Positions 26,860 through 48,827 of a stretch of DNA of 64,000 nt are shown here, piece after piece. The stretch's first letter is position 1. Each line of letters starts with the position of its first letter. A program made the translations under genes and the position numbers. The notes beneath the pieces were generated by a model. The model was not told the origin of the DNA and made no database searches. It saw only the letters and a list, made by a program, of their open reading frames with translations. Location of the stretch: IMG/VR virus record IMGVR_UViG_3300027844_001828, positions 171,625-235,624 of that record; one strand, 5' to 3'.

Positions 26860-28280
26860 CATATTATGAATGAAGAAAAAGAGACTGGAAATCCCATTAT
26901 CAGCCTTATCCCAAAAAAATAAGTCATTTATTTGGGGATTCGTTATCTGCTCATTGTTGGTCTATGTAACATCTGGTCCAAAGCAAGAGGCGGAAAACCA
27001 AAGTGGAAGGGACAAAAACGATTGAAAAAAACAGAAGTTATTCATAGGGTTGAAATAGCAACAGTTAAACCAGACGTTTCTGGTTTTTAAGTAATTCCAA
27101 ATGTTATATATGATAAGATAGAATATGATGTTACTCTTTTTGATTCGAACCGAAAAGCACTTGCGACATGGGATCTCAGATATATCATAATCAAATAACT
27201 GGCGACCTTCATCTTATAACCAATTCGAAAAAAAAGGGGCGGTTGTATTGAATATCTGGAAAGGGCCATACGGAATCAGTGTGTCTGAATAGATAAATAG
27301 TCTATAACTAACTGTTAATGAATAATTTACGCGGAGTTATGAATAGATGGAAGAGTTAACTAAAGAATCAAGTCGATTGGAGTTTCTCTTTCCGATCATG
27401 ATAGCTAATAGAATGATTAGAACCAATTCTGCTGGCCCTGAGTGTGAAAGGAAATGGTTTAGAAAGCCTCATGGTTGGGAAACACAAAGAAAGACTCCAA
27501 CGTATTTGTATCAACAATGCGCGTTCTGTTCAGACAGGAAGATGATAAGGTTGGCTGAAGGATTTGATGAGCCAAGAGCAAGGGGGTGGGAAGACATAGG
27601 AGTGGTGAAACAAAATGAAAATTGAAGATGACGGGTCGCTCACACTTCACAGGTGTGATATAGCATGGTGGGTTGACCATTTTGAGAAATCAGACCAGCG
27701 TTTTAATGAAATGGATGTCAAAAAAAGAGCTTAGTGAATTGTCTGAGTTCTCGCCAGACGCATAGATCGCCGCCGCCTCTGCTCAGTCGGCAGGTTATAA
27801 AAAAAGACGGTTGAGTGGATCGAACAAAAAAGGTCAATAGAAAAAACATAATGAAGTAACATTATTAACACAATGAAGCGACATGTTCTTTTTTATAATA
27901 GCCGTGCTTATAACAGTCATCTTTATGATGGATGTGGAAGCGGGAATTATTACAACAGGCGTTTGTTCGCTTTTCACCCTAACAATACTTACAGGATTTA
28001 CAAACTGGATATTAATAGTCCTGATTATTGACACAATCATTACTGGCAGCGTTGATGAAACACTGTTTGGAATGACAATGTTTATAACAGCACTATTTTT
28101 ATTTTCAGAAATATGACAATGAGAGAAGAAGATAGAATTGAACTGAAGAAGGCCTTGAAAGAGGCATCGATTAGTACCAGACCATCAAACCGCTTTGATC
28201 GTGTGGCAACAATAGAATTTAAGAGCGGATCGACGAAATCAGCAGAACTAATATTGAACGCGGCAAGAAGCTTCGTCAGG

Positions 28281-28320
28281 ATGAAAGAAGATTAAAGAAG
28301 ATTAAAGAAGATTAAAGAAG
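28281..28320 (+). repeat. 10-bp tandem repeat x4
   Basis: AT(G/T)AAAGAAG repeated four times. Confidence 0.85.
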
Positions 28321-29095
28321 AATAAGTGACAACGCAAGATCTAATGGATTTGGATGGGGGGAACCGCCGTCCTGAAGAGAGGTAACCATGAAAATAAAGA
28401 TCATTCAAGCTGGACAAGCATTAAGATGTAAGAAATCTCACATTTTCAAGTTGATGGAGGTGGGGTCGAATGATCAGATAAATGTCGAATTCAAGTGGTG
28501 TATCTATTATGAGGATGACACCTTGGTTAAGACCAGAGCCGATAAAGAGGAATATGTTCTCCCGAAACAAATGTCCATAACATCAAGAAACGCTACAAAA
28601 GAAAGCGCTGAACTTGTACTCGAAGAAGAATTCTCAAAGTACATAGCATCAATGGAACAACCAGACGGCGACGACGCACTCGTTTTGTTCTTGGAAGGTA
28701 AAGAGAAAAACATTGTCTATCAAGATGAAGATGTATGGGTGGCAATTAAGGAATTCTTCTTGTTTTTGTGCGAATGGGACGAGCCACCAGAAGTTAAAGA
28801 GCCAGAAACCTATACACAAGAAGAACTTGAAGAACATCAAAAGTCCGTACCCGAACTCTGGGACGCAGATCCCGATTGCTGGCATGAACTCGATCCAAAC
28901 TCATGGTCTGGAATCAAATGTATGAAATGCACAGGGTGGTATCGCCTCTAATGAATAGAAACACAGTAATATTTATTATCCTCTTGTCGTTATTTTTATT
29001 AACGGCAGCATGCGGATTTCCAGCTATGGCTTGACAAACACATAATTATCCGGTATAGTACAAGCATTAACAACGACAAGAACTAAGAGAATAAC

Positions 29096-29749
29096 ATGAA
29101 CTTGACAAGAAAACTATTGGCGTCAACAGAGCCGTGCCTCAAAAGAAACGCGATCTATGACAAAGACCCACAACAATTAGCCTACACAGTCAATGCGTCC
29201 ACAAACCCAATGGTCTTTATGGATGCGCAGAAAAGGATCATCGGCGAAGAGATCATTATCAAAGGTGATCTTGAATATATTGAAAAGAACGAAGATAAAA
29301 TGCTCACCGGAATCTTCGACCTTGCACAAGAACACGAAAAAGTCAAATATGATTTCAGAGACTTTAGATTGAGAACGATGATAAGGGCCATCCAGGACAT
29401 TGAAAAACATGATCTCGTCGTCGCAAATATCATCATGGGAATCGAAGACTGGACCCAATTGAATCACTACTACTCGGCTAAAAAATGGAAGAGGGTCTTC
29501 GGAGCATACGCAAAGGTAAGACCCATGACCGAAGAAACCTGGAAAACAACTGGAATCATAGCAAAGATCCAAGGACCAATAAGACCAGTTGATATCATCG
29601 CCCTTCCAAATATGCCAAAAGGACAAATCTACCTCGCTACCAAGGGAGAGTATATTGGAGAAATTAGTTCGTCGGAATTGAAGGATAATGTAAGATCTTT
29701 AACGATCTGTATAACAAGCATGACTGGAGTTAATGTATTAACAACATGA
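29096..29749 (+). CDS. Hypothetical protein, possibly a degenerate major-capsid-protein paralog
   Basis: Order of motifs RKLL, IYDKD, IEKHDLVVANIIM, TGIIAKI.G, MPKGQIY, EYIG recalls HK97-fold MCPs of large phages (from memory only). Confidence 0.35.
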   Translation: MNLTRKLLASTEPCLKRNAIYDKDPQQLAYTVNASTNPMVFMDAQKRIIGEEIIIKGDLEYIEKNEDKMLTGIFDLAQEHEKVKYDFRDFRLRTMIRAIQDIEKHDLVVANIIMGIEDWTQLNHYYSAKKWKRVFGAYAKVRPMTEETWKTTGIIAKIQGPIRPVDIIALPNMPKGQIYLATKGEYIGEISSSELKDNVRSLTICITSMTGVNVLTT

Positions 29750-30062
29750 AAATAAGCAACTTCAAATTAGAAAATGAAGAGAGAGACGGTGAGCATGTGA
29801 TTTTTACAGGGACAGTTGAAGTAGTCACCGGCTCCTGGTTCTGGAAAAAGAAGACGGTCAAAGGAGTCAAGAAGAAAACTTTTTTGTGGTTCTGGACCGA
29901 CAATGGTGAATTAACTCCGGGAGAACTCGTGGAAAACGCCGCCAGAGTCTTTGCAGAAAAATCAGGCAAGCATCCCAAACTCTTGTGAAAGAAACAATAG
30001 ATAAAACTGTTGACAATAAATCACAAGACTTAAGAATAAATTTGAACAGTAGGAGCAAACCA

Positions 30063-30458
30063 ATGAAACCAACTATCGGATGGAAAGTCATTAGTAAAGA
30101 GAGAAAATCAATCCTTACAGGTGATGTGAAAGGATACGGAAAAGAATATCCAATCGGGAAAATGGTGGGAAGATCCAAACGAAGACTCCCAATTATGGCA
30201 ATGAAAACAAGACAAGATGCCGTGGATTTCATAAAGATGGAAAGAAAAAAACACGACGAACAGGAGAACTACTTCACAAGAGCATTAGATGAAGCAGTGA
30301 TCGTTCAAGTGGAAATGTATGGAATCAAAGACAAAACAGAATACGTTAATGATACTAAAATCTTCTTGGTCTCTACTACGCCAATTGTAAGCCAATCATA
30401 CAAAAGACCATGGGCCAAAGGAACCGTCCTCTGCGAAGCAATCAAATGTATAACTTGA
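30063..30458 (+). CDS. Hypothetical protein, paralog of ORF 26413
   Basis: AGGAG SD; shared motifs with ORF 26413. Confidence 0.65.
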   Translation: MKPTIGWKVISKERKSILTGDVKGYGKEYPIGKMVGRSKRRLPIMAMKTRQDAVDFIKMERKKHDEQENYFTRALDEAVIVQVEMYGIKDKTEYVNDTKIFLVSTTPIVSQSYKRPWAKGTVLCEAIKCIT

Positions 30459-31961
30459 TAGGAGAATAAACAATGAAACCAGAAGGATTACTTCTTAAAG
30501 CCGAAAGAGAATACATAGAAAAGAACAAGTCGCCACTAAGAGAAGACTACCACTATGTCTAAAATAATGAGAGGAAATCTTTTAATAAAACACGGATTCT
30601 CAGTAGCTGTTGATGGTGTTGAAATCACAAGCAATCTATGATAACCTTACCAAAAAATAAAGCCATCGATGCCATTATAGCCGTCTACGTCAAACCAAAG
30701 GAAATAAAATGACATATAACACGCATACAGAGGGACTACCGCCAGGAAATGATAAGGACAACAAAGCTAAGAATAGAAGACCAAACGAAGGTAAGATTAA
30801 ATGCCCAGAACTAAACAAAGAACAACAAATAAGATATAATGCATACCTTGAAGGATGCTTGAAATATGTACATATCTGGGAACCAACAGAAGAACAATCT
30901 CAAAGAGAATTGAAATACGCAGAAGAACAATCTCAAAGAGCATTGGAATACGCAAAAGATAAATCACGAAAAAGCTTTCAATAACAACATGAATGAACAT
31001 AAAGAAGAATAAGCATGGGATAAGCAATGTAACCTCGAATTAACTGGGAGAATAAAGAATGACAGGAATAGAATGGTATTGCATATACTGTGGAGGATCA
31101 ATACTTACAAGCCTCGGAATCATTATGAACAACGGTGATAGATTCATAAGAAAAAAACACCCAAGATATGACGCCGATATATCAATCATAGCATGCCCAT
31201 TACTATTGCCAATGTCAATATACGCATTGATAGGTAAATTTTTATACTTAATTAATATAAAGACCACGTACATGACATATAACGAAAAACAGGAGAACCA
31301 ATATGGAACTCAACTTTAACCCGTTATTTGAACAATTGAAAAGAAAAAGAATTATTACTAATAACAAGCCGAAGCACAACCATAAGAAAATTAAAGAACA
31401 AAAACAAAAACAAGAGCAAAAGAAAAGGATGCTGCCAATTATGACAGCGATAACAGGATGAAACAAATTATTAATAAAATCATTGACTGACTCTGGTGGA
31501 TCATTGTAATAAGAAAAAATGAGTCCCACCCATCCCTTAACATGAACAAAGTAAATAAACATGGAATGCTCATAGAACAAAATAGAATCATGAGACTAAG
31601 AAAAAAAGAACATGACATGGATCTTGATAATGAATGACAATGAGGGAGAACAATATGGAAGATGAAGTATAGAAGAAACTCAATTGATTGAGAAAGAGAT
31701 AAAACTAATAAGCACAGACGCAGAACTCGGAGAAGCATGGTACGCTTCTCTCATAAATTCAAAGAAAACCTCGATCAAGAAAGACAAAATGAAACTAAGA
31801 TCCGAGACAGCGATGGAGCAAGACCAGTTGAAATACACGATGGAGGAAACCTCGGAAGCCAAAGATCAGAGATCATAGTATGGAATGCAGATCATGATTC
31901 AGTCGAATACGTTAGAGATAACATGAAGGAACTCTGGAAAGTAGTGTTGTTAGGAGAGTAA

Positions 31962-32715
31962 CACTGAATGTTGCGCACATAGGCGAAGTAGCACTGAATG
32001 CGTATACGATACACACGCACACACAGGTGATACTATCAAATGATCTATAGGAGGCCTTAAAATTGATATAATGACCTGTATATAACCCATTAAGTGACAT
32101 TATGGATCATATATGACGCATTATAGAGTCCTACTGAATGTTGTGCAGGCTCCTATGACATGCACTGAATGCCCACGCAAGGGCGCACGGAACATGCACT
32201 GAATGCCTGGATAGACATGCGCTCGAACATGCGCTCGAACATACGTGTGAGAGCGCATGTTACAAAAAAGCGTAACACTTGTTATAAAATAATGTAACTA
32301 TTATATGAATGGGTAAGGACTGGGGAAAAGTGTTATACAAAAGTATAAATAATAATTAATAGAATCACTTTTTCGAATTTCAGGAGCGCTGCTCAAAAAA
32401 ATTTCTCCTTTAATGATGTTGTGTAAAGATCGCAAAATCAAACACTTACAAAAATGACTAAAATATAATAACTGTAAGGATTAAAATAGGCCGTTTAAGG
32501 GGTTGCACTGGTCGCAATAGAGGTGTATATTGTGTACCATGATGGGCAACTATCGTCGTAGTAGAGGTTAATGTTAGTAAGAAGATGACGAGTTTTTTGA
32601 CATGCACTGAATGTTCGTATGTGCGCATGTGTGTTAGTAAGTATGCACGCCTGTTAATAATGTGACCTGTCGTTTAAAAATGATGACCTGTGATTTCTAA
32701 GAGGTTAGCCAACTT
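31962..32715. other. Long non-coding locus; candidate replication origin or genome terminus
   Basis: CACTGAATG at 31962, 31992, 32163, 32197, 32605 plus TACTGAATG at 32132; AT-rich core; strand composition flips here. Confidence 0.5.
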
Positions 32716-32784
32716 GTGAACTTTAAGTTTCGCTTACGAAACTCAAAGTTCATTTATCAATATATAGGTGTGATACATTTAAAT

Positions 32785-33399
32785 ATGATTGATCCTCAGA
32801 AGAAAAAATTATATGCCTGGGAAGAATATCTACATGATCATTTGGAAATTGTAGAAGAGAGCCTATCAATCGTAGAGTGCCGAAAAATCATTCGAGAGAT
32901 GTGCGAAGACTTTGCTATCATTCCCCCAAAAGTGATAATCGGGAAAAAAGAATATGCCATGGCATCTGGGGATGGGAAATTAATCGAGTTGCCAAAATGG
33001 TTTCTGGAAGAACTATCTAGTATTCATGAGGCATGTCATGTGATCGCCTTTAGCATAGCTCCACAAGAAAATCATCATGGCCCGACATTCGTGAGATTGA
33101 TGATAGATTTTATTAAAAAGAGATGGGCATCTGAGATAACATTAAAAAGACTTGAGGATTTAGCTCTTAAACATAATCTAAAAATTGCGAAGCTTGGGGT
33201 GGTCTCTCCGGTCACGAAACGAGAGAAACAGAGGCTAAGGCGGCTAAGAACAAATGTGAAGATAGCAGACGATATGTACAGGGTGAATCAAAGGGGATCA
33301 AAGCGGGCCATTAATTATAAAAAGAAACGGGACTCTTATAAAAAAGAATTATCTGATCTCGTCGGACTTCTTTATAAAAAGTACTGGTCAGTCTTATAA
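32785..33399 (+). CDS. Zincin-motif (SprT-like) protein
   Basis: IHEACHV...HHGPTF. Confidence 0.6.
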   Translation: MIDPQKKKLYAWEEYLHDHLEIVEESLSIVECRKIIREMCEDFAIIPPKVIIGKKEYAMASGDGKLIELPKWFLEELSSIHEACHVIAFSIAPQENHHGPTFVRLMIDFIKKRWASEITLKRLEDLALKHNLKIAKLGVVSPVTKREKQRLRRLRTNVKIADDMYRVNQRGSKRAINYKKKRDSYKKELSDLVGLLYKKYWSVL

Positions 33400-33481: not shown

Positions 33482-33515
33482 GGTTCACTGTATAAAACAT
33501 TTTATACAGTGGACC
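33482..33515 (+). repeat. 34-bp 13-8-13 palindrome, copy 1
   Basis: GGTTCACTGTATA-AAACATTT-TATACAGTGGACC; degenerate copies at 33429-33462 and 33548-33581. Confidence 0.95.
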
Positions 33516-37764: not shown

Positions 37765-38553
37765 ATGCCACGGACTAATAAACCCGTCCCGAAGTTTTTA
37801 CTCACCTTGAAATCGTCAAACATCAAAACCGGGCCGATGGCTGTAAGCACTTCTCCAATGGGTACTTGCCCGGACGCCTGCCCTTTCAAGGGTAATGGTT
37901 GCTACGCTGCCTACGGCCCTGTAAAAATCTGGTGGGACGCCTGTACAGCCAATGGTGACGATCCGGTTGAGGCATACACTGAGTTCCTTAGCCGCGTTAC
38001 TGAAAACATTGACAACGATGCATTTTGGAGACATAATCAAGCTGGCGATTTATTTTCATTGAATGGTCGAACGATCAATCAAAAGGCGGCCCGTGCTTTG
38101 ATTGCTGCGAACGAGGGTAAGAAAGGTTATACTTACACTCACTACGGCGTGATCAAACAGCCTTTCACACAGAAGCGTGAGGCAGAGCGGAATCGTAAGA
38201 TTGTTGAAGAAATGAATGCGAGCGGGTTCGCTACGAATGTATCGGCTAACAGCATGGAGCATGCCGATAAGATCAAGGCGAGCGGTATCAAGGCTCCAAT
38301 CGTTACGTTGTTGCCGGAGCGGTACAAACATGACAAGAAAGCTTTCTTGACACCTGGGGGCAATAAGATCGTTGCTTGTCCCGCGATTACACATGACGAC
38401 ATTACTTGTGTGAAGTGTAAGCTTTGCATGCATCCTGAACGTGATATTATCGTGGGGTTTCCATCACATGGTAGTGGTAAACGCCGGGCTGAATCAGTGT
38501 ACACTGAATGGAGTCCGGACGAGATTAAAACAACAGCCAAGGGAAAAATCTAA
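37765..38553 (+). CDS. Cys-rich conserved phage protein (gp88/radical-SAM-like; putative Fe-S or Zn binding)
   Basis: SNIKTG, TCPDACPF...CYA, RHNQAGD, YTYTH, CPA, CVKCKLC, FPSHG. Confidence 0.6.
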   Translation: MPRTNKPVPKFLLTLKSSNIKTGPMAVSTSPMGTCPDACPFKGNGCYAAYGPVKIWWDACTANGDDPVEAYTEFLSRVTENIDNDAFWRHNQAGDLFSLNGRTINQKAARALIAANEGKKGYTYTHYGVIKQPFTQKREAERNRKIVEEMNASGFATNVSANSMEHADKIKASGIKAPIVTLLPERYKHDKKAFLTPGGNKIVACPAITHDDITCVKCKLCMHPERDIIVGFPSHGSGKRRAESVYTEWSPDEIKTTAKGKI

Positions 38554-38925
38554 TGGGAAAGGAACAGAAAGTTATTTTAGAGGGTTCGTATTTAACTATC
38601 TCACACTTGGCTTAGATCATGTCCTTATGAGATGAAACCTGGCGAGACCGATTGTTTCGCTCCTTCTGAGCTTCAAGAGTTTTATGATATCGTATCTAAA
38701 ACTGGGTTTTTTATTTTTCGCGGTTTGGATTTACTTATTTTTTGGTTTTTCAATAATTGTTGTAATCTCTCTTGTGTTATTTACTCTCATTAATGTTTTC
38801 TTTTTAATAGCCTTATTTAATAAGGCGGAATATTTTGATGATTGACTTGACAGGAATGCCCTCAGCGGTTACAGTATGGTTAACTGTAACTGTTAACATA
38901 ACCAACCAGGAGTTGTAAAGCCAAA

Positions 38926-39093
38926 ATGGCGAACAGATCAAAAATCATTAGTAAGTTCAATCAAAAGAACAAAACCCGTCGTGGATTTGACGATGGATAT
39001 TCCGCAAACCGTGAACCGACGAGGAAGAAGAAGCGCAGCAAGCGCATAAAGCCTCCGAAGGAAGACAGTTACGAGAGAAATGGTCGCGACTAA
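38926..39093 (+). CDS. Small basic protein (55 aa, below ORF-track cutoff)
   Basis: Upstream promoter TTGACA-N17-TACAGT and AGGAG; Lys/Arg-rich. Confidence 0.55.
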   Translation: MANRSKIISKFNQKNKTRRGFDDGYSANREPTRKKKRSKRIKPPKEDSYERNGRD

Positions 39094-39434
39094 TTTATAA
39101 CAACTCCTTGACAAAAACTCAACCCGTGCTATGTTGTAGGTATGAAGAACATCAAACAGGTACGGGTAACACTTGAAAAATGATAGTTGCCCTATCAAGA
39201 GAAAGTGTCTAAGGTGGATGGCAAAGCCAGGACTAAATGCAGACGGCGGGTTCGAAGAATGGCTGGCCGATATTTTCGCGAAAGAGGGTATTGATGTTCC
39301 CCATTCTGCCCTCGGAATGGTCAAAGAGCGCATCAAATACTTCGATAATCGGCCCAATCGTCAAAGATCTGAAGCGCCAGTTTAAGGGCTTAGATGTCAT
39401 CAAGGATTATTAATTTAACCAAACAGGAAAGAAG

Positions 39435-39758
39435 ATGAACAACGAAAGAATTGCGAGACAGCTGGTAAAGATTGCCGGTGAGTTAGTAGGAGCAAGTAGA
39501 GCCAAACCCAAGGACAAAAAAAGTCCTTTCGATAATGCAGTCGATAAATATGAAGACATGGTGAAGGACGGGTATAGCCACGCTGATGCTTTGAAACATA
39601 CCAAGAGTTCTTTCCCAGGATTGACAAAGACAGATGAGAAAGATATCTCGAAGGTCAAGAAGCTCTTTGGCGATCACCGACTTACAGCCGAGGGAATTTC
39701 GACAGGCAGAACGGCAGCCAAAATCATCACGGTTGGAAAGTACAAGTTCAAATGGTAA
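39435..39758 (+). CDS. IAxEL-leader family protein
   Basis: MNNERIARQLVKIAGELVGA. Confidence 0.7.
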   Translation: MNNERIARQLVKIAGELVGASRAKPKDKKSPFDNAVDKYEDMVKDGYSHADALKHTKSSFPGLTKTDEKDISKVKKLFGDHRLTAEGISTGRTAAKIITVGKYKFKW

Positions 39759-39950
39759 TGACATTAACTCCAGCGAAGGAAGAGGCATTATGCGAGTTGC
39801 TGTAGGAACAATTAGTCCCATGATCCTTTTCCATATGGCTTGTGTCAATTCAGAGTGAAACATGAGCATGCAACGTTCGTTGGCGAGACTCTCAAGTCTC
39901 TTGATGTTGAGGAATACGAAATTAAAACAATAACCATCGAGGATTGATCC

Positions 39951-40688
39951 ATGGAAAAGCTTTTTCAAGGTACGTTATCTGTCTGGAGTGGTTGCGTTTA
40001 TGCTCAGGCGAGGCCTTTTACTTATGAAGACTTCGAGTTTTTCGATCTTTCTGTTTCAGAGAAAGGGGGAACCAGCAAGTATGCGTCGGTGACAAAGGCC
40101 TTTCGATTGAAACAAGAGGTTCTCGACGAAGTCGTTTCAGAAAGTTGCCTCAGTATTGGCAAGGGCTTCTTCATGGAATGGGATAAGATAAAGAATCATT
40201 ATATTTATGTCACACAAGACATCAAGTATAATGGCTGTCGGACTTTGGCTTCGAAAGTTGCCAAGTATGATAAGGCCTGTGCGGAAGTTATTTATCGCTG
40301 GAATGAGATTGGCGACTCCTTGGTTGAGAAGCGCATCGAAGAAATCAATGAGGACTTTCAAAGGTTGTTGTCCCGGTCTCGTGAGGATTACCTTCAGCGG
40401 TACACTGAATTCCTCTCAAACTTGAGAGGGTACGAGCAATCAGAGTTGATCGAAGAGTCTGGCACAGCTTCTGATATTCTCATGCTTGATGAGATGGGAA
40501 AGGCGGTCATGGCCTTGGAGAGATCAATTAATTCTAGGAAGTACGCTTGTCTTTTAGAATCATTCGAGTTGCCTGATAAGGGCAGCTGGATCAACGAGCT
40601 TCCCACTGAATTGACTGAGCAGGTTATTTTGAACTTGAGAAAAAGTGTTGATAACTCAGTTCCGGAATTCCGAGGAGTTTTGACTTAA
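39951..40688 (+). CDS. Hypothetical protein
   Basis: 245-aa ORF with GGAGG SD. Confidence 0.65.
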   Translation: MEKLFQGTLSVWSGCVYAQARPFTYEDFEFFDLSVSEKGGTSKYASVTKAFRLKQEVLDEVVSESCLSIGKGFFMEWDKIKNHYIYVTQDIKYNGCRTLASKVAKYDKACAEVIYRWNEIGDSLVEKRIEEINEDFQRLLSRSREDYLQRYTEFLSNLRGYEQSELIEESGTASDILMLDEMGKAVMALERSINSRKYACLLESFELPDKGSWINELPTELTEQVILNLRKSVDNSVPEFRGVLT

Positions 40689-41460
40689 GGTGAAAGACCC
40701 CAGGAACATCAGCGAATTTACAAGTAATCGAAAACCCCCTCCTGAACCATCAAGCAAATCTGAAAAAGAATTGTATTGGGCTCAACAGATTGCCGAGATG
40801 TTCTCAGAGAAAGAACAGAAGGACAAGGCGGGTGAAGTCGTAGGTTACTGTATTGAAGAGGGTTACGACTTGCTCGATATATTTCGAGCGTTAGTGGTTC
40901 TTAACTCGGCCTATGAACGTGAGAAGTTAAAAGTATTAAACCTCCAAGAAAAAACTTAGAATGGAGTTGTAAAGATCTTCATTTAACGGTATAGTAATTG
41001 GTGTTAAGGGGCATATTGCCCAGAGGTGAAAAAGCGAACAAGGAGAAGGCTTATGAATATAACTGTGAGACAATTTGCTCAGATCAACAACATGTATCCA
41101 CCTAATTTGGCGGACATGGATTACAAGACCCGTAAGAAGGTAGAGGCCAAGGTGTATGCGAGAGCCTCGGCGGTTGTTAACTATCTCCTTACGATCAATG
41201 CAATCACTGATACTGGCAAGAAAGTGCAGGCACGTGGTGGTATTGGGCGAAGTTCGGTCGTGTACAGCGTACCAGCCGGTGCGATTCATTTGACCTTGGT
41301 TGCAGAAGGCACCGATGTTCCTGAGGATACCCCTTATCCTGAGAAGCCTAAGGCAGAAGAGACCACACCAGAGGTAGATACAAACATGACTACCACTGAG
41401 AATGAAGAATCAACGGAGCCTGTGGAAGCGTCAGCGTAGATCCTGAGAAGTTGTAAGATG

Positions 41461-41496
41461 GTGCTCGTCGGGGAACCCGGCGGGCACTTTCTTTTT
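41461..41496 (+). terminator. Intrinsic terminator
   Basis: GTGCTCGTCGGG-GAA-CCCGGCGGGCAC followed by a T-tract. Confidence 0.8.
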
Positions 41497-42450
41497 ATTA
41501 GGGCTTGCATCCACTGAATGTGGGGGTATCGTATGTGTATGAACACCCACACACCCCCGGAGACATATTAAGATGGACCCTCAAAGCTACAATACCTTTC
41601 GCACCATGTTCCAACGTGGTGAGATCACTGGTGAGATCACCCAGTTCGGTGCGGATGAGGTGAAGGGTGATACCAACTTTGGTCATGCACAAACACTTAC
41701 GCCAGAACAGTATCTGGGTCTTGTTACCGACCCTCTCCAAGAAGTAGCTGCACTTTTGAGTTCTCGCTTCGGTCTTGGTCTTGTTGACATCGACGAAGAG
41801 ATGGCGATTCGTAATTTAGTGGAAGGCTCTACGCCAGAAGCTATTGTGAATGATATAGAGACTAAACAAGACCTTGATCGTAATGATCAAGGCCCCTACG
41901 GATTGGGGTTACAGGGTTGGATTTGAACAGGTCTTAAACACTTCTGTGTCGTATAATATACATATATCTACAGGAGATGACATGTTAAAGATACTACAAA
42001 CAGAATTAGATAGAACATCAATAATTAAACAACTATCATCGGAGTAGATTGTGACTCATATGGAATTAGTAGGATGGTATGCAATAGGCTTTTTTGTAGT
42101 ATATGTATTGTTTTATGTATTAGAAATCATAGAAATTTCATGAGAAGAAGATGATGAGTTTCCAGGAGGCGCAAGCATGTCACTTAAAGCATTGCTTGTT
42201 CTTCGTTAGAAAGATAGGTTCTGATGAGTCTGAGCCGTTAGAAACGGCAAAGCTTTTGAAAGACAAGACTCACGTATTTTTTCAGGCTTAGCTTATTCTA
42301 AGCGCATTGAAGCCGGTCACATATTAGTCCCTGCCCATCCTCCGTCCTCATCAACGAGGCGACCGCCAAGTATACACCCGCGAAGAGTTCGATGCTGAAT
42401 ATGAGTGGGTGGGCTGCTCCTACCCGCCACAATCGAGCGGGTCCTAACTT

Positions 42451-42484
42451 GGTTCACTGTATAAAAACTTTTATACAGTGGACC
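42451..42484 (+). repeat. 34-bp palindrome, copy 2
   Basis: GGTTCACTGTATA-AAAACTTT-TATACAGTGGACC. Confidence 0.95.
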
Positions 42485-43683
42485 GTAGTGATAGGCACCC
42501 GGAAGTCTTTTTCCTAAAAACTCCTCAAGTGAGCTTGTAACCAACGAATGATGGGTTATTGTGTGAGTATGTCAAAAACAATCCAGATCAAAAAGGGCTG
42601 CGAGTGTGGTAGCCAGAGGTTCAATGCAGATCGATTGATCCGCGTTGAAATCATTGTTGACGAGAACAATATGTTCGTTGAAAATATAGCTGGCGGCGAT
42701 GCTGTCTCTATTGTTGACGACAAACCCCCAGAGGGACCGTACACTTGTGTTGAGTGTGAGTGCGAGTACGACACCCTTGATGGAGAATGATGCCTACCAA
42801 ACGTAAGTTTTACCGTACTGTTCTTGCTATCGAAGTTCTTAGCGAGACGCCCATTTCGGCCTGTACTTCATATCAGGACATTCTTCGTGAAGCTGAAGAG
42901 GGTGATTTCTCTCATGCTTCACTTCCTCAAGAGGTATACAATCAGGAAATAGACGGGCGAAAATGCGCTGAGCTTTTGGTTAGGCAGGGTAGCGATTCTG
43001 GTTTTTTCCAGTTGACAGATATTGGGGAGGATGTCGAGGATTATGATGGATAAATTGTATGTTCCTTATGTGACGGAAAGGTGGGTAGTGATACCGCACA
43101 CCTCAATCAAGATAAATGGATCGGAGAGTGTTGCTGGGATGAAAGACTCCGGGGGACAGAATAATGGCTGAGTTAATAGTAATTTCTGTGGTTATTTTCA
43201 TTTCTTGTGTGGTGTGTACGTTCGTTGCCACACAAAAGCAGGCGAAACCTTTGATGATCTTGCAAGGGGTTATCAGAAAGAGATCGAAGAGCTTTACAAG
43301 CAGATCGCCAACATGATCGAATTTGTCCCATTCACAGCCTGGAGAATTGTGTATGAGAATAAGATGTTCATTGTAAAAAGCGAACAGATTAATATACGCA
43401 GGATTGTAAATGGAGAAATCCGATATATGGTTAGCACTGGCATGTTCTGCACTGGGATGTTTTCGACTCTTTATGACAGTCGAGACGACATTCCTAAAGG
43501 TAGGGGGAATTCCCGCACATGGTATCACCATGCTCTTTTCAAAGATGAAATTGAAGCGTTGCTTGCCATTCAAGGGTTGGCGCAAGAAATTTTGAAGACT
43601 CGCAACGATTCACATCAAGAAGACGTTTTACCGCTTCACAAATCAATCGACTCAAACGCCAAACGCTTAAAGGAACTCGGAAT

Positions 43684-43860
43684 ATGAAATACATTCGCAG
43701 AAATCCGCTGGAAAAAGACTTTGGTTGGGGAAAATTAAAATTAAGAAGTTGGGATAAAATTAAAAATGAGCTTGACAAATGCGATCTTCTTTGTGGAAAT
43801 TGCCATGATGAAGCGCATCAAGAAATTAGAACTGGAACTATTTTTACCCCAATAGCTTAA
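43684..43860 (+). pseudogene. HNH endonuclease C-terminal remnant running into tRNA-Arg
   Basis: NPLEKDF...WDKIKNELDKCDLLCGNCHDEAH. Confidence 0.7.
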
Positions 43861-43920
43861 GGGATAAAGCAGTGGATTTCTAATCCACATATTCAGGTTC
43901 GAATCCTGGTTGGGGTACCA
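43846..43920 (+). tRNA. tRNA-Arg(UCU)
   Basis: Acceptor ACCCCAA/TTGGGGT, anticodon arm GTGGA-TTTCTAA-TCCAC, T-loop GGTTCGAATCC, encoded CCA. Confidence 0.92.
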
Positions 43921-44138
43921 GAATTAACTTAATTAACTGCTTGATAAATTTCAAAACGGAGATAGAGTAACAGTATGCAAGAAATACTCACAACCTTAAT
44001 TGCCTTGGGGGCCTTACACTTTACATCGTGTGGAACATTTCCTACACCCTCTCACATTTTCATTGGTGTCAATAGGACTTACGAAAATACCTTTCGTGAG
44101 TAAAGATCCTGATAACGTAACCTGTTGTAGCGTAACCT

Positions 44139-44236
44139 GCTTCAGTCCATTAGGCGGGTTCGCCTGGCTGCGAGTTCCAGGGGGGTGCGGAACTGTTCGC
44201 AATTGAGACGGTAACGCACAACACGGAGGACTGAGC
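44139..44236 (+). ncRNA. Candidate multibranch structured RNA
   Basis: TCAGTCC/GGACTGA closing stem; inner TAGGCG/CGCCTG and TGCGA..GTTCC/GGAAC..TCGCA. Confidence 0.4.
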
Positions 44237-44314
44237 AATAACTGCGCAAAACTATCGCACATACCGGCGCAAGTACGATACTACCATCAAACATAAACCA
44301 AACGAGGCTGAATA

Positions 44315-44941
44315 ATGAGTAAAGCAACCATCATGGCTGGCATCGACAGCGACAGCAGCCGCGTCATCGCCAACAATACAGTCGAGTACACTGTTGGCAA
44401 AGCCCGTACAATACGGCTGCATTCGACGGACGTCATCACCTTCGATGCGCTCGGCGGCGTGACGCTGGACACGGGGGGCTGGCTAACCCCGACCACCAAA
44501 GACCGGATAAACCAATTCCAAACCGCTGCTCGGTTGCACAGCGAGCGGGGGATCTGGTACGCTACCATCGGAGGCAAGCGGTACATATATCAAGACGGCC
44601 TCCGCATCGGGCCACGCGGCGGCGTCACGGGCCACGCTGGTCCGGCAGCGATCAAGGCGCAGCGTAAAAAAACTAAGCAAATCAAAGCTTACTGCGATGC
44701 TATTCGGGCGCTGGATACGTTGCCAGAACCAGAACCCGGTGACTGTTTTATTTGTAGTGGTTTTAAAGGCACCGATTGTCTGCAAAGTCACCTGGATGAG
44801 ATGTATATACACGGGTCACTCATTAGGCGCGCAATGGAGGCGCGTGGATACAGCGAGTTTGCGCTGCGATTTGCCTATCAGATCGACAATCGTGACACAG
44901 TTGTCCGTGCAGTCCTAGCCTATTTCAAGGCCAACTGCTAA
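44315..44941 (+). CDS. Conserved phage hypothetical protein in a GC-richer island
   Basis: RLHSTD...TLDTGGWLTPTTKDRIN motif. Confidence 0.65.
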   Translation: MSKATIMAGIDSDSSRVIANNTVEYTVGKARTIRLHSTDVITFDALGGVTLDTGGWLTPTTKDRINQFQTAARLHSERGIWYATIGGKRYIYQDGLRIGPRGGVTGHAGPAAIKAQRKKTKQIKAYCDAIRALDTLPEPEPGDCFICSGFKGTDCLQSHLDEMYIHGSLIRRAMEARGYSEFALRFAYQIDNRDTVVRAVLAYFKANC

Positions 44942-45472
44942 TCCACCGGATCGTCCGCTCTGATAGGCAACTCATCCCAGCACCAACGCAGTCTAATCAG
45001 CCATCGCATAGATCGTGATCTCGCTCATTGAAGTTTACATTCGGCGCGATGTTTCCATTGTAGAGGCCGAGGAATGGATTTGGGACAGACATGGGCGTGG
45101 ATTCACGAAACTCAAGGATTTTCATTGTGACCGGCCTTATATCGCCTTCATTCGTACACATGATGGGTTCACTCGGCAAAGAATTGGCAAAAGGTTACTT
45201 TTCAAGGCGACTGGGATCATTCAGGACAGGTTAGGCCTCGCCGGTATCCATTCAGGGGAAAGTTCGACCAGAGGTACTGGTGGCCGGGCGTTCTTTACTT
45301 ATATTGAGCGTTACTATAGGCATCGATTGAAATCTAAGAATCTCCCAGGTTCCCGCAAAAAAGATTATGTTATTGTTTGACATTTCGACAATCTGCATTA
45401 TGGTAGGGCATCATGAACAAACACAACTTCTAAGCACATCTCAGCCAACTTAAATCAACAGAGGAATTAGAA

Positions 45473-46114
45473 ATGTCTTTTCATGGAATGATAGATCGAA
45501 TAGCTGGTGCAGCAGTTAAGACTGCTATAGATTGGGCACCAGTAGAAGAGGGTTTGGATTATTGGCCAGTTGAAAAGCAACAATCTGAATTGGATAATGC
45601 TCAAAAGGTTTTCAAGAAATCTCTTCAAGATGGTTCGTTTAGGAAACTGCATGCAATCATAAAAGGTCGCAGTACTTACTATAATGCTACATCAGATCCT
45701 AAGGCTTTCTCTTTTCATGCTCCTATCGCATTGATGTTGGATGCCATGAATGAGCTTGGGTGGAGAGGGCTTGAGGATGACATATCAAGATTGGTGGCAA
45801 GAAGGGTATATGAGAATCCAGATTCTGGCATCAAGATAATGAAAGGTGAAGGTGATACGTTTGTAGCATTTCTTCCTTCTTCAAGTGCAAAGCCGGTTGA
45901 TAGGCGTAGTAGCGATAAGACTGCCAGTAAGTATATCCTTACTGTTGATGATTCTGTTGAGGCTCACAAGTTGGAGAGTATGGCAGATGATTTGAAGGAT
46001 GTGGAGTATGACAACTATGATGTTTACTCTACAGATAAGGATGGTCTCAAGAAGCTGAAGAGTGAATTGAATAAAAAAGGAATTAATTCTGAAGCAATAA
46101 AGACACGTTGGTGA
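45473..46114 (+). CDS. Two-domain protein with RIA/KTA motifs (leader-family relative)
   Basis: MIDRIAGAAVKTA; internal DKTA. Confidence 0.6.
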   Translation: MSFHGMIDRIAGAAVKTAIDWAPVEEGLDYWPVEKQQSELDNAQKVFKKSLQDGSFRKLHAIIKGRSTYYNATSDPKAFSFHAPIALMLDAMNELGWRGLEDDISRLVARRVYENPDSGIKIMKGEGDTFVAFLPSSSAKPVDRRSSDKTASKYILTVDDSVEAHKLESMADDLKDVEYDNYDVYSTDKDGLKKLKSELNKKGINSEAIKTRW

Positions 46115-46452
46115 TCTTAACGTAGGGATCTTAACGGACCTCGATAAGGGGAGAGACGAGCCAGTTAATAAGACAGTAGAAAAAACAATCGGATTCAATT
46201 TAATCATCAAACACTCAAGGAAGGTATCATGTTGTTAGGCTTAATTTAATTTATTACTGTGACGATCTGGGCTTGGTTAATTCCGGCTGGAGTTTCAGCT
46301 TTGATTTTGATTGCTGGACTCTTTATCGTTTTTGTTAAATTAAGGGATGATGGTACAGACGAAGAGGATCAATGTGTTGTTGGATACATCTTCGTAATCC
46401 TTTTCGTCTGTCCTTGGCTTGCTTACTTTCTTATCGTATAGGTGTTTGTTTA

Positions 46453-46586
46453 GGGACCGTAGCACAATGGTATGTCATAATTGTCATGGAGAGATACATG
46501 ATGAGCTAATTCCTAAAAAACAAATTTTAGAACTTCAAATTAGTAAATGGAATCGTGGCCAAACGGTTAAGGCTGCATGCTCATAA
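46453..46586 (+). pseudogene. tRNA 5' fragment fused to HNH C-terminal remnant
   Basis: GGGACCGTAGCACAATGGT joined to (M)VCHNCHGEIH. Confidence 0.6.
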
Positions 46587-46624
46587 CATGTTGATTGTAG
46601 GTTCGAACCCTACCGGTTCCACCA
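46549..46624 (+). tRNA. tRNA with CAU anticodon (elongator Met or Ile2)
   Basis: Acceptor GGAATCG/CGGTTCC, anticodon arm GCATG-CTCATAA-CATGT, GGTTCGAACCC, encoded CCA. Confidence 0.9.
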
Positions 46625-47580
46625 TTTCTTTTCAATAACGCTTGTAAAAATTCAAACCAGTGTCATTGTACCTCCATGAGCAAAAGCATTTCAGATCGAC
46701 TCGAAGAGTTGAAAGTTCACCTTCGTAATAAGCATCGGATTAAGTATGGCGCTGACTATACAATCTTGATCAGTAGTGAGCAACTCCATATATTATGTGT
46801 TGATGCTTACACTGATGCTATCATTGAACACTTTCGAAGTTTTGATATTGCAATCTCAACGTTGTCAATCATAGGGAAAAGGGAGTGGTAAGTATGAAAT
46901 TCTTACTCGCATTCTTTCTTTGTTCGAATCTCTATGCGGTAGATATCTTCGAATAGTTCGACCGAATCGCTGCAAAGGACTACCATTTGCAGGTTTATTA
47001 CTGTTCTAACATGTGTTCCGAGTTCATCATCGCGATAAATCGTTCACTGTTACCGGCGCGAATCACCGCGCCAGACAACCCTGGAGAAAGAATCTGATGA
47101 CTACTAAAGCCGGACATTTCAACCTTGATTGGATCGCGGAATGCCGATCAAATGAAGGTGACGACGAAACGCTTGAGGCATGGGTATGCAGAGCAAGAAA
47201 TTGTGAGATGACTGAGATCGACAAAGATGGTAGTGTCTGGTGCGGTCGAAAGCGGCGGTACGAATACGATGGCTTTTGGCTATCACAAGAAGCGTGCGAC
47301 GAGACCGTAGCCACTATCGAGCGAGGGCTATAGCAAGGGACCAAACCACCGTGGCGAAACGCACCTGCGAGTGCGTCACGTAAAGGAGATTAGATAGTCA
47401 TGTTGTTATGCGCCAACTGCCCAAACTATTATGAGAAGCACGGTACGTGATAGTACTATGCTTCATCCAGCTATCTATAAGAAGAATTTCTCAGCTTATG
47501 GGTATGAAAAACATTTCAATAAAGCTTTGGGTGGACAACCAAGATACTATTAACATTGAAAAAAATCAAGGAGAAAAATA

Positions 47581-47799
47581 ATGAGGACAATCGTCCATGT
47601 GAATCAGCATGTGATAAAAGCTAATAGAAAGAATCAAAAGAACGATCCAGTTTTGACAGTCAAGACCTATAAAAGTAATGACTACGCACATGAGGTCATA
47701 ATAAATGGACCCTCGAAGATAATCTATAGACCGGACAAGCCATTGCCTTGCGGAGCGCAAGTTTGGATTGAAACAGAATCAGATGTAGAAAAAAGGTAG
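47581..47799 (+). CDS. Conserved small phage protein
   Basis: HVNQHVIKAN...PDKPLPCGAQVWIET; AAGGAG SD. Confidence 0.75.
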   Translation: MRTIVHVNQHVIKANRKNQKNDPVLTVKTYKSNDYAHEVIINGPSKIIYRPDKPLPCGAQVWIETESDVEKR

Positions 47800-47880
47800 G
47801 AAGCTTTTTTGTGGAAAATATATTGCCCAGAATGTATAATAAAAGAGGGCGAAGTCAATAACAAACACAGAGGATGACAA

Positions 47881-48036
47881 ATGAGTATCGCTGAACGACT
47901 TGAATATTTACGTGGGGAAATTAAACAAGAACGAATCAGCTACGGAGAAATTGCTGAATTGCAATCACTTGCGACACACATTGACGAGGGTGACGTTCAA
48001 CTCCGAGAATGGGCAGGGATTCCAGAGAGGGAGTAG
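47881..48036 (+). CDS. Small phage protein (51 aa, not in ORF track)
   Basis: GAGGA SD; RLEYLRGEI..ERISYGEIAELQSL...EWAGIPE. Confidence 0.65.
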   Translation: MSIAERLEYLRGEIKQERISYGEIAELQSLATHIDEGDVQLREWAGIPERE

Positions 48037-48130
48037 AGTGGTACAAGATTGTAGACACAGTGATTCCAGCCAATGCAAGGAAAAGAGAGATGGATGAAAA
48101 ATTAAAGCGGATTGACCATTCGAGGCGATT

Positions 48131-48580: not shown

Positions 48581-48827
48581 GATGGCTTTAAGCGGTAATA
48601 AACGATACAAGAGCGACAAATAGGGCTCAAATGGTACCCACTCCCTTAAAAAAATAGAAGATGCACGGCATTCACGCAGTCTAACCACACGCAAGGATAT
48701 TTACAGGGTCAGTGATTTGCCAAATAGTATCGCAGCGAATCTGGAGATCGATGCCGTCAATAGTAGCGATCACTTCGCAGCAGACTTTGCCTTCGCCCCC
48801 TTGATAGAATAAATTTTCCAACACGAG

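What the first reader, a model, noticed from the sequence alone, without database searches (positions are those of the whole stretch)
31962..32715. Candidate replication origin or terminus: composition flip without a gene-strand switch
Seen: the longest gene-free stretch in the window. The + strand is very A-rich and T-poor over about 29-32 kb and becomes richer in G and T to the right, although genes stay on +. It holds six (C/T)ACTGAATG copies, an ACATGCGCTCGA tandem, the inverted motif TGTTAC-N8-GTAACA near 32257 and an AT-rich core at about 32260-32480. Established: leading strands tend to be G/T-rich, so an A/C to G/T switch is expected at a bidirectional origin. Skew was judged by eye only.
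Basis: partly seen in the sequence, partly recalled or inferred. Interest (0 to 1): 0.68.

Follow-up and report, generated by a model that had tools for sequence, protein, structure and literature searches.

The report
Control region bordering phage ORFan array
A 0.8-kb gene-free stretch in an uncultivated giant phage borders a long block of small genes and carries six copies of a strand-specific 9-base signal used throughout that block, so it is most likely a transcription-control hub, although a real local switch in strand composition means a replication start site cannot be excluded.

Summary
The window is the last 64 kb of a truncated 235.6-kb IMG/VR jumbo-phage contig with about 93% of genes on +. 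GC skew is positive in every 5-kb bin, third-position GC skew is about zero, and no cumulative curve turns at the gap. The local A/C-to-G/T switch is nevertheless real at four-fold degenerate sites and is the strongest discontinuity in the contig (z about 5). The locus is not an assembly join: independent assemblies from other samples span it at 99% identity or more. CACTGAATG is not origin-specific. All 18 copies found to the right of the gap's left edge are on +, 14 are intergenic, and they spread over at least 61.5 kb; none occurs on + in the 203.6 kb to the left. They accompany a 16-bp-stem palindrome (21 copies) and a T-tract/TTGCAA/TAGATT promoter module (13 copies), forming cassettes like the PeSLs of T4-type phages. 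Best reading (0.45): a non-coding control region at the left border of a hyperplastic ORFan array. Main rival (0.27): a replication start site. No read-level test was possible.

The parts
31962..32784 (.). Whole non-coding gap: 754 bp to the GTG at 32716, or 823 bp to the more likely ATG start at 32785
   Evidence: No credible ORF. No gene is called here on sibling contigs. No Rfam hit at E<=1 and no tRNA. 99% or more identical in sibling assemblies.
31962..32000 (+). A-box pair 1: CACTGAATG at 31962 and 31992, start-to-start 30 bp. The first copy abuts the stop codon of the 74-aa ORF.
32064..32072 (+). Extended -10-like word TGATATAAT pointing right
   Evidence: Read. Consensus match only: 3 in the window against 2.4 expected.
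32132..32205 (+). A-box triplet: TACTGAATG at 32132 and CACTGAATG at 32163 and 32197, spacings 31 and 34 bp
32215..32238 (+). ACATGCGCTCGA tandem, two copies here and one copy in most siblings
32226..32261 (.). 16-bp imperfect hairpin built partly from the tandem
   Evidence: inverted repeat I2; the 32205-32275 fold is -26.6 kcal/mol, z = -4.1.
32258..32277 (.). TGTTAC-N8-GTAACA, 6-bp arms
   Evidence: Present. Too short to distinguish from chance and not listed by the repeat finder.
32260..32480 (.). AT-rich core, 27.1% GC, A>T on +
   Evidence: (fifth-lowest 200-bp window of the contig)
32500..32700 (.). Short G+T-rich segment where the strand composition changes sign
   Evidence: (keto excess +26 and +16 per 100 bp)
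32593..32613 (+). T-run, TTGACA (32597-32602), then the sixth A box (32605-32613) in spacer position
   Evidence: The layout parallels the terminator/CTTGCAT/A-box/TATCGT arrangement at 41460-41540.
32717..32752 (+). 16-bp hairpin just upstream of the first right-arm gene
   Evidence: -17 kcal/mol, z = -7.7. In L212 an A-to-G change turns its single A.C mismatch into a G-C pair.
27000..31961 (+). A-rich block of tiny + strand genes, with A>T and C>G at four-fold sites rising toward the gap
32785..33399 (+). First right-arm gene: 204 aa with an HExxH motif, a weak SprT-like match and a basic C-terminus
33486..33511 (.). First copy of the palindrome (B), 894 bp after the last A box. Other window copies start at 42455, 52648, 52751, 56302 and 62477.
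38502..55440 (+). Dispersed A boxes in the window at 38502, 41512, 51614, 51645 and 55432

Best explanation
The gap is the non-coding control region at the left border of a long array of small ORFan and accessory genes. The array is at least 61.5 kb and has higher GC than the rest of the contig. It belongs to an uncultivated jumbo phage that uses host-type sigma70 promoters and also encodes its own sigma factor.

Shown:
- The array is punctuated by a private vocabulary of cis-elements found nowhere else in the contig. These are the exact 9-mer CACTGAATG (A box, always on +, mostly intergenic), a palindrome with a 16-bp stem (B), and a T-tract/TTGCAA/16-18 nt/TAGATT promoter module.
- In places these join into composite stem-loop / A box / GC hairpin + T-run / promoter cassettes.
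- The gap holds the densest A-box cluster (six copies, in groups about three helical turns apart), two strong hairpins, promoter-like words pointing right and an AT-rich spacer.

Inferred:
- A boxes are recognition sites for a sequence-specific phage or host factor acting on transcription (start, stop or read-through).
- The gap insulates the array from read-through out of the A-rich gene block on its left and launches or gates transcription into the array.
- The composition step reflects the junction of two gene blocks with different histories or mutational regimes.
For: - A box genome-wide: 10 exact + strand copies in 235.6 kb against about 1 expected, all at genome 203,586-227,056. It is the most over-represented 9-mer of the contig.
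- With the extension from sibling contigs: 18 of 18 on + (p = 8e-6) and 14 of 18 intergenic against a 26% intergenic fraction (p = 7e-6).
- One-mismatch variants are at chance level, so recognition is strict.
- Palindrome B: 21 copies, 16 intergenic (p = 3e-6), folding at -15 to -24.5 kcal/mol.
- Nine of 12 A sites have a B copy 850-1150 bp downstream, matched by 0 of 200,000 permutations.
- Promoter module: 13 copies, all on +, all in the right arm. Full B/A/hairpin/T-run/promoter cassettes start at extension coordinates 85943, 89717 and 91763.
- At 41460-41540 an intrinsic terminator is followed by CTTGCAT, an A box and TATCGT.
- Sigma70-like + strand sites are about two-fold over shuffles in both arms, and the ribosome-binding word is shared.
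- The right arm holds ORFans plus an HNH endonuclease, DUF932, DUF7227, a GHKL-type ATPase and two tRNAs, with no structural or replication genes.
- PeSL cassettes of T4-type phages are the same kind of thing (PMC2839356, PMC4122927).
Against: - No transcript data, so no A box is shown to start, stop or modulate transcription.
- A boxes are not followed by stable hairpins more than control positions are, and no consistent -10 or -35 partner was found by inspection.
- The gap lacks both the palindrome and the promoter module. Its extended -10 word is a consensus match at chance frequency, and sigma70-like sites in 31-34 kb are at chance level.
- The regulatory reading does not by itself explain the gradient of A>T and C>G at four-fold sites rising toward the gap from the left. 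The polarity there is opposite to what transcription of + strand genes should produce.
- The 30-34 bp phasing of A boxes suits protein binding of any kind, including an initiator.
Confidence: 0.45

Rival explanations
1. Replication start site. The gap is an origin: bidirectional, or transcription-primed like the T7 primary origin or T4 oriF/oriG. Equivalently, on a circularised map, it is the junction of termini from which strand-displacing synthesis begins. A boxes in helical phase would bind an initiator or organise the DNA, and the AT-rich core would unwind. The strand left single near the start would accumulate deamination, giving A/C-rich + strand on the left and G/T-rich on the right, decaying with distance.
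For: - The local switch at four-fold sites has the right polarity, rises toward the gap from the left, and is the largest discontinuity in the contig.
- The sign change falls inside the gap at about 32.5 kb, at the edge of the AT-rich core.
- Direct repeats sit 30-34 bp apart beside a 27% GC stretch of 221 bp.
- No other AT-rich or non-coding site of the contig has a repeat cluster.
- A rightward extended -10 word lies about 190 bp upstream of the AT-rich core.
Against: - No contig-scale inflection in GC, GC3 or keto curves.
- The effect is dominated by one A-rich block of about 5 kb. The G-C component is modest and fades within 4 kb.
- The boxes are dispersed, strictly co-oriented with transcription and built into terminator/promoter cassettes over at least 61 kb.
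- No DnaA boxes, no DnaA-family gene, and no recognisable initiator among the neighbours.
- The helicase-primase, clamp loader and polymerase lie at genome 42-72 kb.
- The contig is incomplete, so a better candidate may lie in the missing part.
Confidence: 0.27
2. Physical genome terminus, packaging site or injection-pause region. The gap would be where virion DNA ends lie (terminal-repeat boundary, pac/cos) or where DNA entry pauses. The nearest analogues are the repeat-rich region beside the T7 terminal repeats and the non-coding repeat region at the inner edge of the T5 first-step-transfer DNA (both recalled from memory, not checked here).
For: - A long repeat-rich non-coding region separates a small-gene array from the rest, with all genes co-oriented.
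- Four contigs from other samples start inside the gap, at about 32328 (two), 32388 and 32648.
- The local skew polarity also fits end-initiated displacement synthesis.
Against: - At least six other contigs run straight through the gap.
- The 32328 break sits next to the A/T polymorphism at 32327 and about 100 bp from the 12-nt indel. That is typical of assembly-graph breaks at strain variants.
- No Terminase_6N domain is detectable in the contig.
- No end repeats are known for the record, and gene order around the map does not follow a simple early-to-late polarity starting here.
Confidence: 0.07
3. Structured non-coding RNA or long regulatory leader. The gap would be transcribed from its left part, and A boxes plus hairpins would act at RNA level as processing, antitermination or stability signals. 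The strict + strand orientation would follow from this.
For: - All A boxes are on the transcribed strand.
- The gap folds better than shuffles (z = -3.1), with two strong local hairpins and one compensatory-type change in the second hairpin.
- The contig's other long ORF-poor stretch is a giant ncRNA.
- The palindrome outer stem shows GGTT/AACC versus GGCT/AGCC pairs.
Against: - No Rfam family matches at E<=1.
- The 27% GC core is poorly structured.
- The z-score is modest and rests on 20 shuffles.
- Siblings are too similar for covariation analysis.
Confidence: 0.08
4. Strand-specific recognition sites of a phage nicking or homing enzyme. An exact 9-mer on one strand only would mark single-strand interruptions like those reported for T5 and some Pseudomonas phages (recalled from memory, not checked here).
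For: - Exactness of the 9-mer, with one-mismatch variants at chance.
- Strict strand bias.
- GCGC-core words within about 16 nt downstream in roughly half of the first 14 copies (my reading; no statistical test run).
- An HNH endonuclease gene in the array, ending about 0.9 kb upstream of an A-box pair.
Against: - Intergenic confinement, paired phasing and incorporation into promoter/terminator cassettes are not expected of nick sites.
- There is no direct evidence of nicks.
Confidence: 0.04
5. Assembly join or chimera of two phages with different GC content and signals.
For: A GC step from about 0.40 to 0.44-0.55, and different motif vocabularies on the two sides.
Against: - Contigs from several other samples and assemblers (ENA megahit contigs and scaffolds, JGI, Logan) span the gap with the same genes for 10 kb on both sides, at 99.8% identity or more.
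- No repeat lies at the junction.
- Both sides share the same ribosome-binding word and sigma70-like promoters.
- The right arm has no structural or replication module of its own.
Confidence: 0.01

Closest known systems
PeSL (promoter-early stem-loop) cassettes in hyperplastic regions of T4-type phages (PMC2839356, PMC4122927)
   Same: Near-identical composite elements recur between small ORFan genes in a variable genome region. They consist of a stable stem-loop plus a sigma70-like promoter with a T/AT-rich tract upstream of -35, all co-oriented with the genes.
   Different: - This phage is not T4-type in its polymerase: it has a DnaE-like Pol III alpha.
- The stem-loop is an AT-centred 16-bp palindrome, not GGGG...CCCC.
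- There is an extra exact 9-mer box with no PeSL counterpart, coupled to the palindrome at about 0.9-1.1 kb.
- Recombination at the elements is not shown here.
- The flagged gap contains only the A box, not a full cassette.
Transcription-primed phage origins: T7 primary origin (tandem phi1.1A/B promoters followed by an AT-rich stretch) and T4 oriF/oriG (promoter plus downstream unwinding element). Established knowledge, not checked in papers here.
   Same: Rightward promoter-like words and tandem oriented boxes are followed by an AT-rich stretch of about 220 bp in a non-coding region.
   Different: No evidence that the boxes are promoters. No T7-type RNA polymerase was found, though that search's control genomes also gave no hit, so absence is not shown. 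Function is untested.
Iteron-type origins (lambda ori, theta plasmids) and bacterial oriC
   Same: Clustered direct repeats roughly in helical phase beside an AT-rich element, with a local strand-composition switch of the right polarity.
   Different: The repeat is 9 bp, is dispersed over at least 61 kb, and is co-oriented with transcription. There are no DnaA boxes, no adjacent initiator gene and no long-range skew.

Membership tests
Iteron / oriC-type replication origin | Cluster of direct repeats (initiator sites) confined to the origin | tested here: not met
   Six copies cluster in the gap. However, 12 more exact copies are spread over at least 61 kb to the right, all on + and mostly intergenic.
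Iteron / oriC-type replication origin | Adjacent AT-rich unwinding element | tested here: met
   32260-32480 is 27.1% GC, the fifth-lowest 200-bp window of the contig. About 12 other sites are comparable.
Iteron / oriC-type replication origin | DnaA boxes or an initiator gene next to the repeats | tested here: not met
   No DnaA-box matches in the gap. No Bac_DnaA domain in the contig. Neighbouring proteins have no initiator domain.
Iteron / oriC-type replication origin | Inflection of cumulative strand skew at the site | tested here: inconclusive
   There is no contig-scale inflection in GC, GC3 or keto curves. There is a local switch at third-position and four-fold sites, the strongest in the contig, with the right polarity. 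The contig is incomplete.
Iteron / oriC-type replication origin | Supports initiation of replication | not testable with these tools
   This needs marker-frequency data or a replication assay.
Transcription-primed phage origin (T7 / T4 type) | Active promoter reading into a downstream unwinding element | tested here: inconclusive
   TGATATAAT at 32064-32072 lies about 190 bp upstream of the AT-rich core. It is a consensus match at chance frequency, and no transcript data are available.
PeSL-type composite promoter-terminator cassettes | Repeated sigma70-like promoter with a T/AT-rich upstream tract | tested here: met
   There are 13 modules, all on +, all in the right arm from window 54262 onward. 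None lies inside the flagged gap.
PeSL-type composite promoter-terminator cassettes | Adjacent conserved stable stem-loop | tested here: met
   There are 21 palindromes folding at -15 to -24.5 kcal/mol, most of them 40-100 nt upstream of a promoter module. The gap has other hairpins but no copy of this palindrome.
PeSL-type composite promoter-terminator cassettes | Concentration among ORFans in a hyperplastic region | tested here: met
   The right arm consists of small genes without family hits plus accessory genes. The motifs are absent from the other 203.6 kb.
PeSL-type composite promoter-terminator cassettes | Indels and replacements with junctions in the cassettes (recombination points) | tested here: not met
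   Three indels among the siblings have junctions 0.46-1.7 kb from the nearest palindrome and 2-4 kb from the nearest A box. The siblings are 99.8% identical or more, so the test is weak. A 100-nt and a 257-nt internal duplication do exist.
PeSL-type composite promoter-terminator cassettes | Terminator and promoter activity | not testable with these tools
   This needs reporter assays or transcript mapping.
Genome terminus / terminal repeat / pac site | Fixed read starts or a coverage step at the site | not testable with these tools
Genome terminus / terminal repeat / pac site | Independent contigs ending at the site | tested here: inconclusive
   Four contigs start inside the gap and at least six span it. 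One break point coincides with a strain polymorphism.

The most novel reading that the evidence does not exclude
The gap is a genuine replication start site of an uncultivated jumbo phage, either an origin or the junction of termini used for displacement synthesis. It would be revealed by a gradient of strand asymmetry at neutral sites that decays over about 10 kb. The same exact 9-mer would both organise this site and punctuate at least 61 kb of ORFan cassettes, linking replication initiation to a PeSL-like gene-shuffling system.
Probability: 0.2. Interest if true: 0.65.

Novelty: new variant of a known kind. Interest (0 to 1): 0.42.

Why it matters
- **Origins of jumbo phages.** These are largely unmapped. 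A locus that combines the largest truly non-coding stretch, phased boxes, an AT-rich core and the strongest neutral-site strand switch of a 235-kb contig is a concrete, clonable candidate.
- **Regulatory cassettes.** Independently of that, the right arm shows that composite stem-loop/promoter cassettes, known from T4-type phages, also exist in an unrelated lineage with a DnaE-type polymerase. Here they carry two added features: an exact strand-specific 9-mer and a fixed spacing of about 1 kb between that box and the palindrome. This would extend the idea of mobile regulatory cassettes as a general way large phages organise and shuffle accessory genes.
- **Method.** Bulk GC skew in a unidirectionally transcribed phage reflects coding, not replication. 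Four-fold degenerate sites are the right place to look.

Tried and rejected
- **Annotated relatives.** Megablast of 31-34 kb against the phage collection gave no match. tblastn with the GHKL-type ATPase gave no match. The polymerase finds only relatives at 35% identity or less.
- **IMG/VR scans.** Scans with the ATPase and the polymerase found no relatives. DUF7227 relatives sit in unrelated small contigs. The 14-mer ACATGCACTGAATG gave only single, chance-like hits.
- **Palindrome elsewhere.** It occurs in one sibling IMG/VR contig only, and in none of 185,579 species genomes, so it is not a host signal such as a LexA box. Its CTGT-N14-ACAG spacing also differs from the canonical N8.
- **A-to-B intervals as duplicated gene cassettes.** Rejected: only the motifs are shared.
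- **A box as the 5' flank of terminators.** Rejected: downstream hairpins are no better than at control positions.
- **A box as a sigma54 or ECF-type promoter.** Rejected by inspection: no GG-N10-GC and no conserved partner element.
- **'The right arm lacks sigma70 promoters'.** This was my first inference from k-mers. I withdrew it after a fair scan.
- **Phage RNA polymerase.** No T7-type or Rpb1-type polymerase was found. The T7-type search had no positive control.
- **Other candidate origin sites.** Other AT-rich or non-coding sites have no repeat clusters.
- **Conservation analysis.** Sibling contigs are too similar to be informative.
- **First right-arm gene.** The protein atlas gave only viral hypothetical proteins and a weak SprT-like hint.
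Full report
**Context.** The window is the last 64 kb of a single 235,624-bp IMG/VR viral contig (genome coordinate = window coordinate + 171,624). The record is classed as linear and about 93% complete. My crude hexamer-based gene map gives 288 genes, 267 of them on +. The phage encodes:
- a DnaE-like Pol III alpha, a RecD/Dda-like helicase, an NAD-dependent ligase, a ribonucleotide reductase and a Lon-like protease;
- a DnaB-type helicase with an adjacent DnaG-type primase zinc ribbon at genome 42-44 kb;
- a sigma70-family factor next to a clamp-loader-like gene at about 56-57 kb.

No T7-type or Rpb1-type RNA polymerase was seen, although the T7-type search lacked a positive control. No DnaA-family gene or Terminase_6N domain was seen either. 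No close relative exists in the annotated phage collection or in IMG/VR, apart from near-identical siblings.

**The contig is truncated at both ends.** Sibling assemblies continue at least 29.4 kb beyond its right end. Its first bases lie inside a 1607-aa gene of a tail module. Every 'whole-genome' statement below therefore refers to the 235.6 kb held plus that extension.

**Check of the observation.** All listed features are present; details and coordinates are in the observation field.
- The six (C/T)ACTGAATG copies are real and far beyond chance: 12 in the window against 1.41 expected.
- The 12-nt tandem is real but is a copy-number polymorphism among siblings.
- The AT-rich core is 27% GC, one of about a dozen such sites in the contig.
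- The TGTTAC-N8-GTAACA repeat is too short to mean anything on its own. Two stronger hairpins lie at 32226-32261 and 32717-32752.

**Skew at contig scale.**
- GC skew is positive in every 5-kb bin and its cumulative curve rises monotonically.
- Third-position GC skew hovers around zero along the contig. The bulk G>C and A>T of the + strand come from codon positions 1 and 2, so they reflect coding on one strand, not replication.
- A detrended cumulative keto curve has no V at the gap.
- In the classical sense there is therefore no origin- or terminus-type inflection.

**Skew at local scale.**
- The eight genes in the 4 kb left of the gap have third-position AT skew of +0.29 to +0.69, against a genome mean of -0.08. 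The value rises toward the gap.
- Third positions are confounded by amino-acid content, so I repeated the test at four-fold degenerate sites. A-T / G-C skew values are:

| Region | A-T | G-C |
|---|---|---|
| Contig baseline (1-190 kb) | -0.025 | -0.057 |
| Window 21-27 kb | +0.07 | -0.22 |
| Window 27-29.8 kb | +0.39 | -0.24 |
| Window 29.7-32 kb | +0.47 | -0.26 |
| (gap) | | |
| Window 32.7-36.7 kb | -0.16 | +0.18 |
| Window 36.7-45 kb | -0.25 | -0.09 |
| Window 45-64 kb | -0.16 | -0.11 |

- Intergenic DNA in the left block is also A-rich.
- A combined left-versus-right statistic peaks at window 32.6-32.9 kb at 3, 4 and 6 kb scales (z = 4.9-5.7), about 1.4 to 2.3 times the runner-up.
- At 100-bp resolution the sign changes at about 32.5 kb, at the right edge of the AT-rich core.
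- The polarity is that expected of a replication start, with the minus strand more often single-stranded on the left and the plus strand on the right. On the left it is opposite to what transcription of + strand genes would give.
- The signal is dominated by one A-rich block. The G-C component is modest and short-lived.

**Not an assembly join.** Contigs from other samples and assemblers (ENA megahit contigs and scaffolds, JGI, Logan) span the gap with the same genes for 10 kb on each side, at 99.8% identity or more. Some contigs start inside the gap. One such break (two samples) sits next to an A/T polymorphism and about 100 bp from the 12-nt indel, which points to assembly-graph breaks at strain variants rather than DNA ends.

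**The repeated word is not origin-specific.**
- CACTGAATG (the A box) is the most over-represented 9-mer of the contig. All ten + strand copies lie from the gap rightward.
- With the extension there are 18 copies (17 exact plus the TACTGAATG variant), all on +. Fourteen are intergenic, against a 26% intergenic fraction.
- One-mismatch variants are at chance level.
- Four pairs are spaced 30-34 bp apart, about three helical turns.

**Two further right-arm-only elements emerged.**
- A palindrome with a 16-bp stem and an AT-rich centre: 21 copies, folding at -15 to -24.5 kcal/mol.
- A promoter module consisting of a T-tract, TTGCAA, 16-18 nt and TAGATT: 13 copies, all on +.

Downstream of most palindromes these parts line up as stem-loop, 40-70 nt, T-tract, -35 and -10. 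In three cassettes an A box and a GC hairpin sit in between. At 41460-41540 an intrinsic terminator is followed by CTTGCAT, an A box and TATCGT. At 32593-32625 a T-run, TTGACA and the sixth A box repeat that layout.

Nine of 12 A sites have a palindrome 850-1150 bp downstream, matched by 0 of 200,000 permutations. The genes in between are unrelated. I cannot explain this spacing.

**Promoters in both arms.** Sigma70-like + strand sites are about two-fold over shuffles in both arms, and the ribosome-binding word is shared. Host-type promoters therefore serve the whole genome. Only the TGGTATAATA subclass is confined to the left arm.

**What the right arm is.** It contains small ORFans plus an HNH endonuclease, DUF932, DUF7227, a GHKL-type ATPase, an AlaDH/PNT-like gene and two tRNAs, and no structural or replication module. 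GC rises from about 0.40 to 0.44-0.55. This matches the hyperplastic ORFan regions of T4-type phages, which are punctuated by PeSLs. PeSLs are composite stem-loop plus sigma70-like early-promoter cassettes with an AT-rich tract upstream of -35. They act as terminators and promoters, and as recombination points (PMC2839356, PMC4122927). The resemblance is functional, not a matter of homology: the polymerase type differs, the stem-loop differs, the A box has no counterpart, and recombination at the elements is not shown here.

**Interpretation.** The flagged gap is the left border of this array and its densest A-box site. It contains neither the palindrome nor the promoter module.
- **Best reading (0.45).** A non-coding control region that insulates and gates transcription into the array. 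The motif statistics and cassette anatomy are shown. Factor binding and the effect on transcription are inferred.
- **Main rival (0.27).** A replication start site, supported by the local neutral-site switch and the repeat/AT-rich anatomy. It is weakened by the dispersed, transcription-oriented use of the box, the lack of initiator signals and the absence of long-range skew. The two readings are not mutually exclusive, because T7 and T4 origins are promoter-associated.
- **Less likely.** A terminus or packaging site (0.07), an RNA-level element (0.08), nick sites (0.04) and an assembly artefact (0.01).

**Limits.**
- No read-level or transcript data were available.
- All relatives are near-identical, so there is no conservation or covariation evidence.
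- The gene map is my own heuristic.
- The genome is incomplete.
- Comparisons with the T7, T4 and T5 regions and with phage nick sites rest on my own knowledge, not on papers read here.

Noticed in passing
L009:8445-8925 (genome 168,445-168,925, about 2.7-3.2 kb left of the window start): A GOLLD-type giant RNA (Rfam RF02032; 148.1 bits against a gathering score of 150; E = 9.5e-41; full model length) with an embedded tRNA-Met. It lies in the contig's longest ORF-poor stretch.
   Followed up: partly
window 9228-10670 (+): A 480-aa protein with the eukaryote-type PARP architecture (WGR + PARP regulatory domain + PARP catalytic domain; catalytic-domain E = 1.6e-28). This is unusual in a phage.
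   Followed up: no
window 33486-33511, 42455-42480, 52648-52673, 52751-52776, 56302-56327, 62477-62502, plus 15 more in the extension (L202, L216): A palindrome family with a 16-bp stem and an AT-rich centre, specific to the right arm. It occurs in one sibling IMG/VR contig and in none of 185,579 species genomes. Its outer stem shows GGTT/AACC versus GGCT/AGCC pairs. Several Logan contigs end exactly at the first copy, at about 33511.
   Followed up: yes
window 32605 to 33498, 41512 to 42467, 51645 to 52660, 55432 to 56314, and five more pairs in the extension: A boxes are followed by a palindrome at 880-1100 bp in 9 of 12 sites (0 of 200,000 permutations). The genes between them are unrelated. 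I have no explanation for this.
   Followed up: partly
window 54262 and 56376, plus 11 more in the extension to coordinate 91852: A repeated promoter module (CTTTTCA, a few bases, TTGCAA, 16-18 nt, TAGATT-like): 13 copies, all on +, none in the other 203.6 kb.
   Followed up: yes
genome 11,834-184,054 (window 12430 is the last copy): TGGTATAATA, an extended -10-type word: six exact copies (GGTATAATA twelve), all on +, mostly 66-150 nt upstream of genes. It occurs only left of the gap.
   Followed up: partly
L006:11397-19104 (genome about 111.4-119.1 kb): A cluster of eight tRNA genes. The second-largest third-position GC-skew step of the contig lies beside it (about 111 kb, z = 2.9-3.6), and the contig's most AT-rich 100-bp window is at 116,260.
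   Followed up: no
window 1878-3851 (+); L003:7334-9535 (+); window 59490-60578 (+); L186:1351-2058 (+): An FtsH-like M41 peptidase, a Lon-like ATP-dependent protease, an AlaDH/PNT-like protein, and a 235-aa sigma70-family factor next to a clamp-loader-like gene.
   Followed up: no
window 64000 (contig end) and genome position 1: The contig is truncated. Siblings continue at least 29.4 kb to the right with the same regime, and the contig starts inside a 1607-aa gene next to a tail-tube gene. A second assembly breaks within 14 bp of the same right end.
   Followed up: partly
window 47546-47802 versus extension 91258-91512; window 56298-56397 versus extension 90863-90962: Internal duplications of 257 nt (92.6% identity) and 100 nt (95% identity) within the right arm. 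The second includes a palindrome and its downstream flank.
   Followed up: no
window 60877 and extension coordinate 72861: Indel polymorphisms among sibling assemblies (about 383, 100 and 63 nt extra in L194, L197 and L203). Their junctions are not at A boxes or palindromes.
   Followed up: partly
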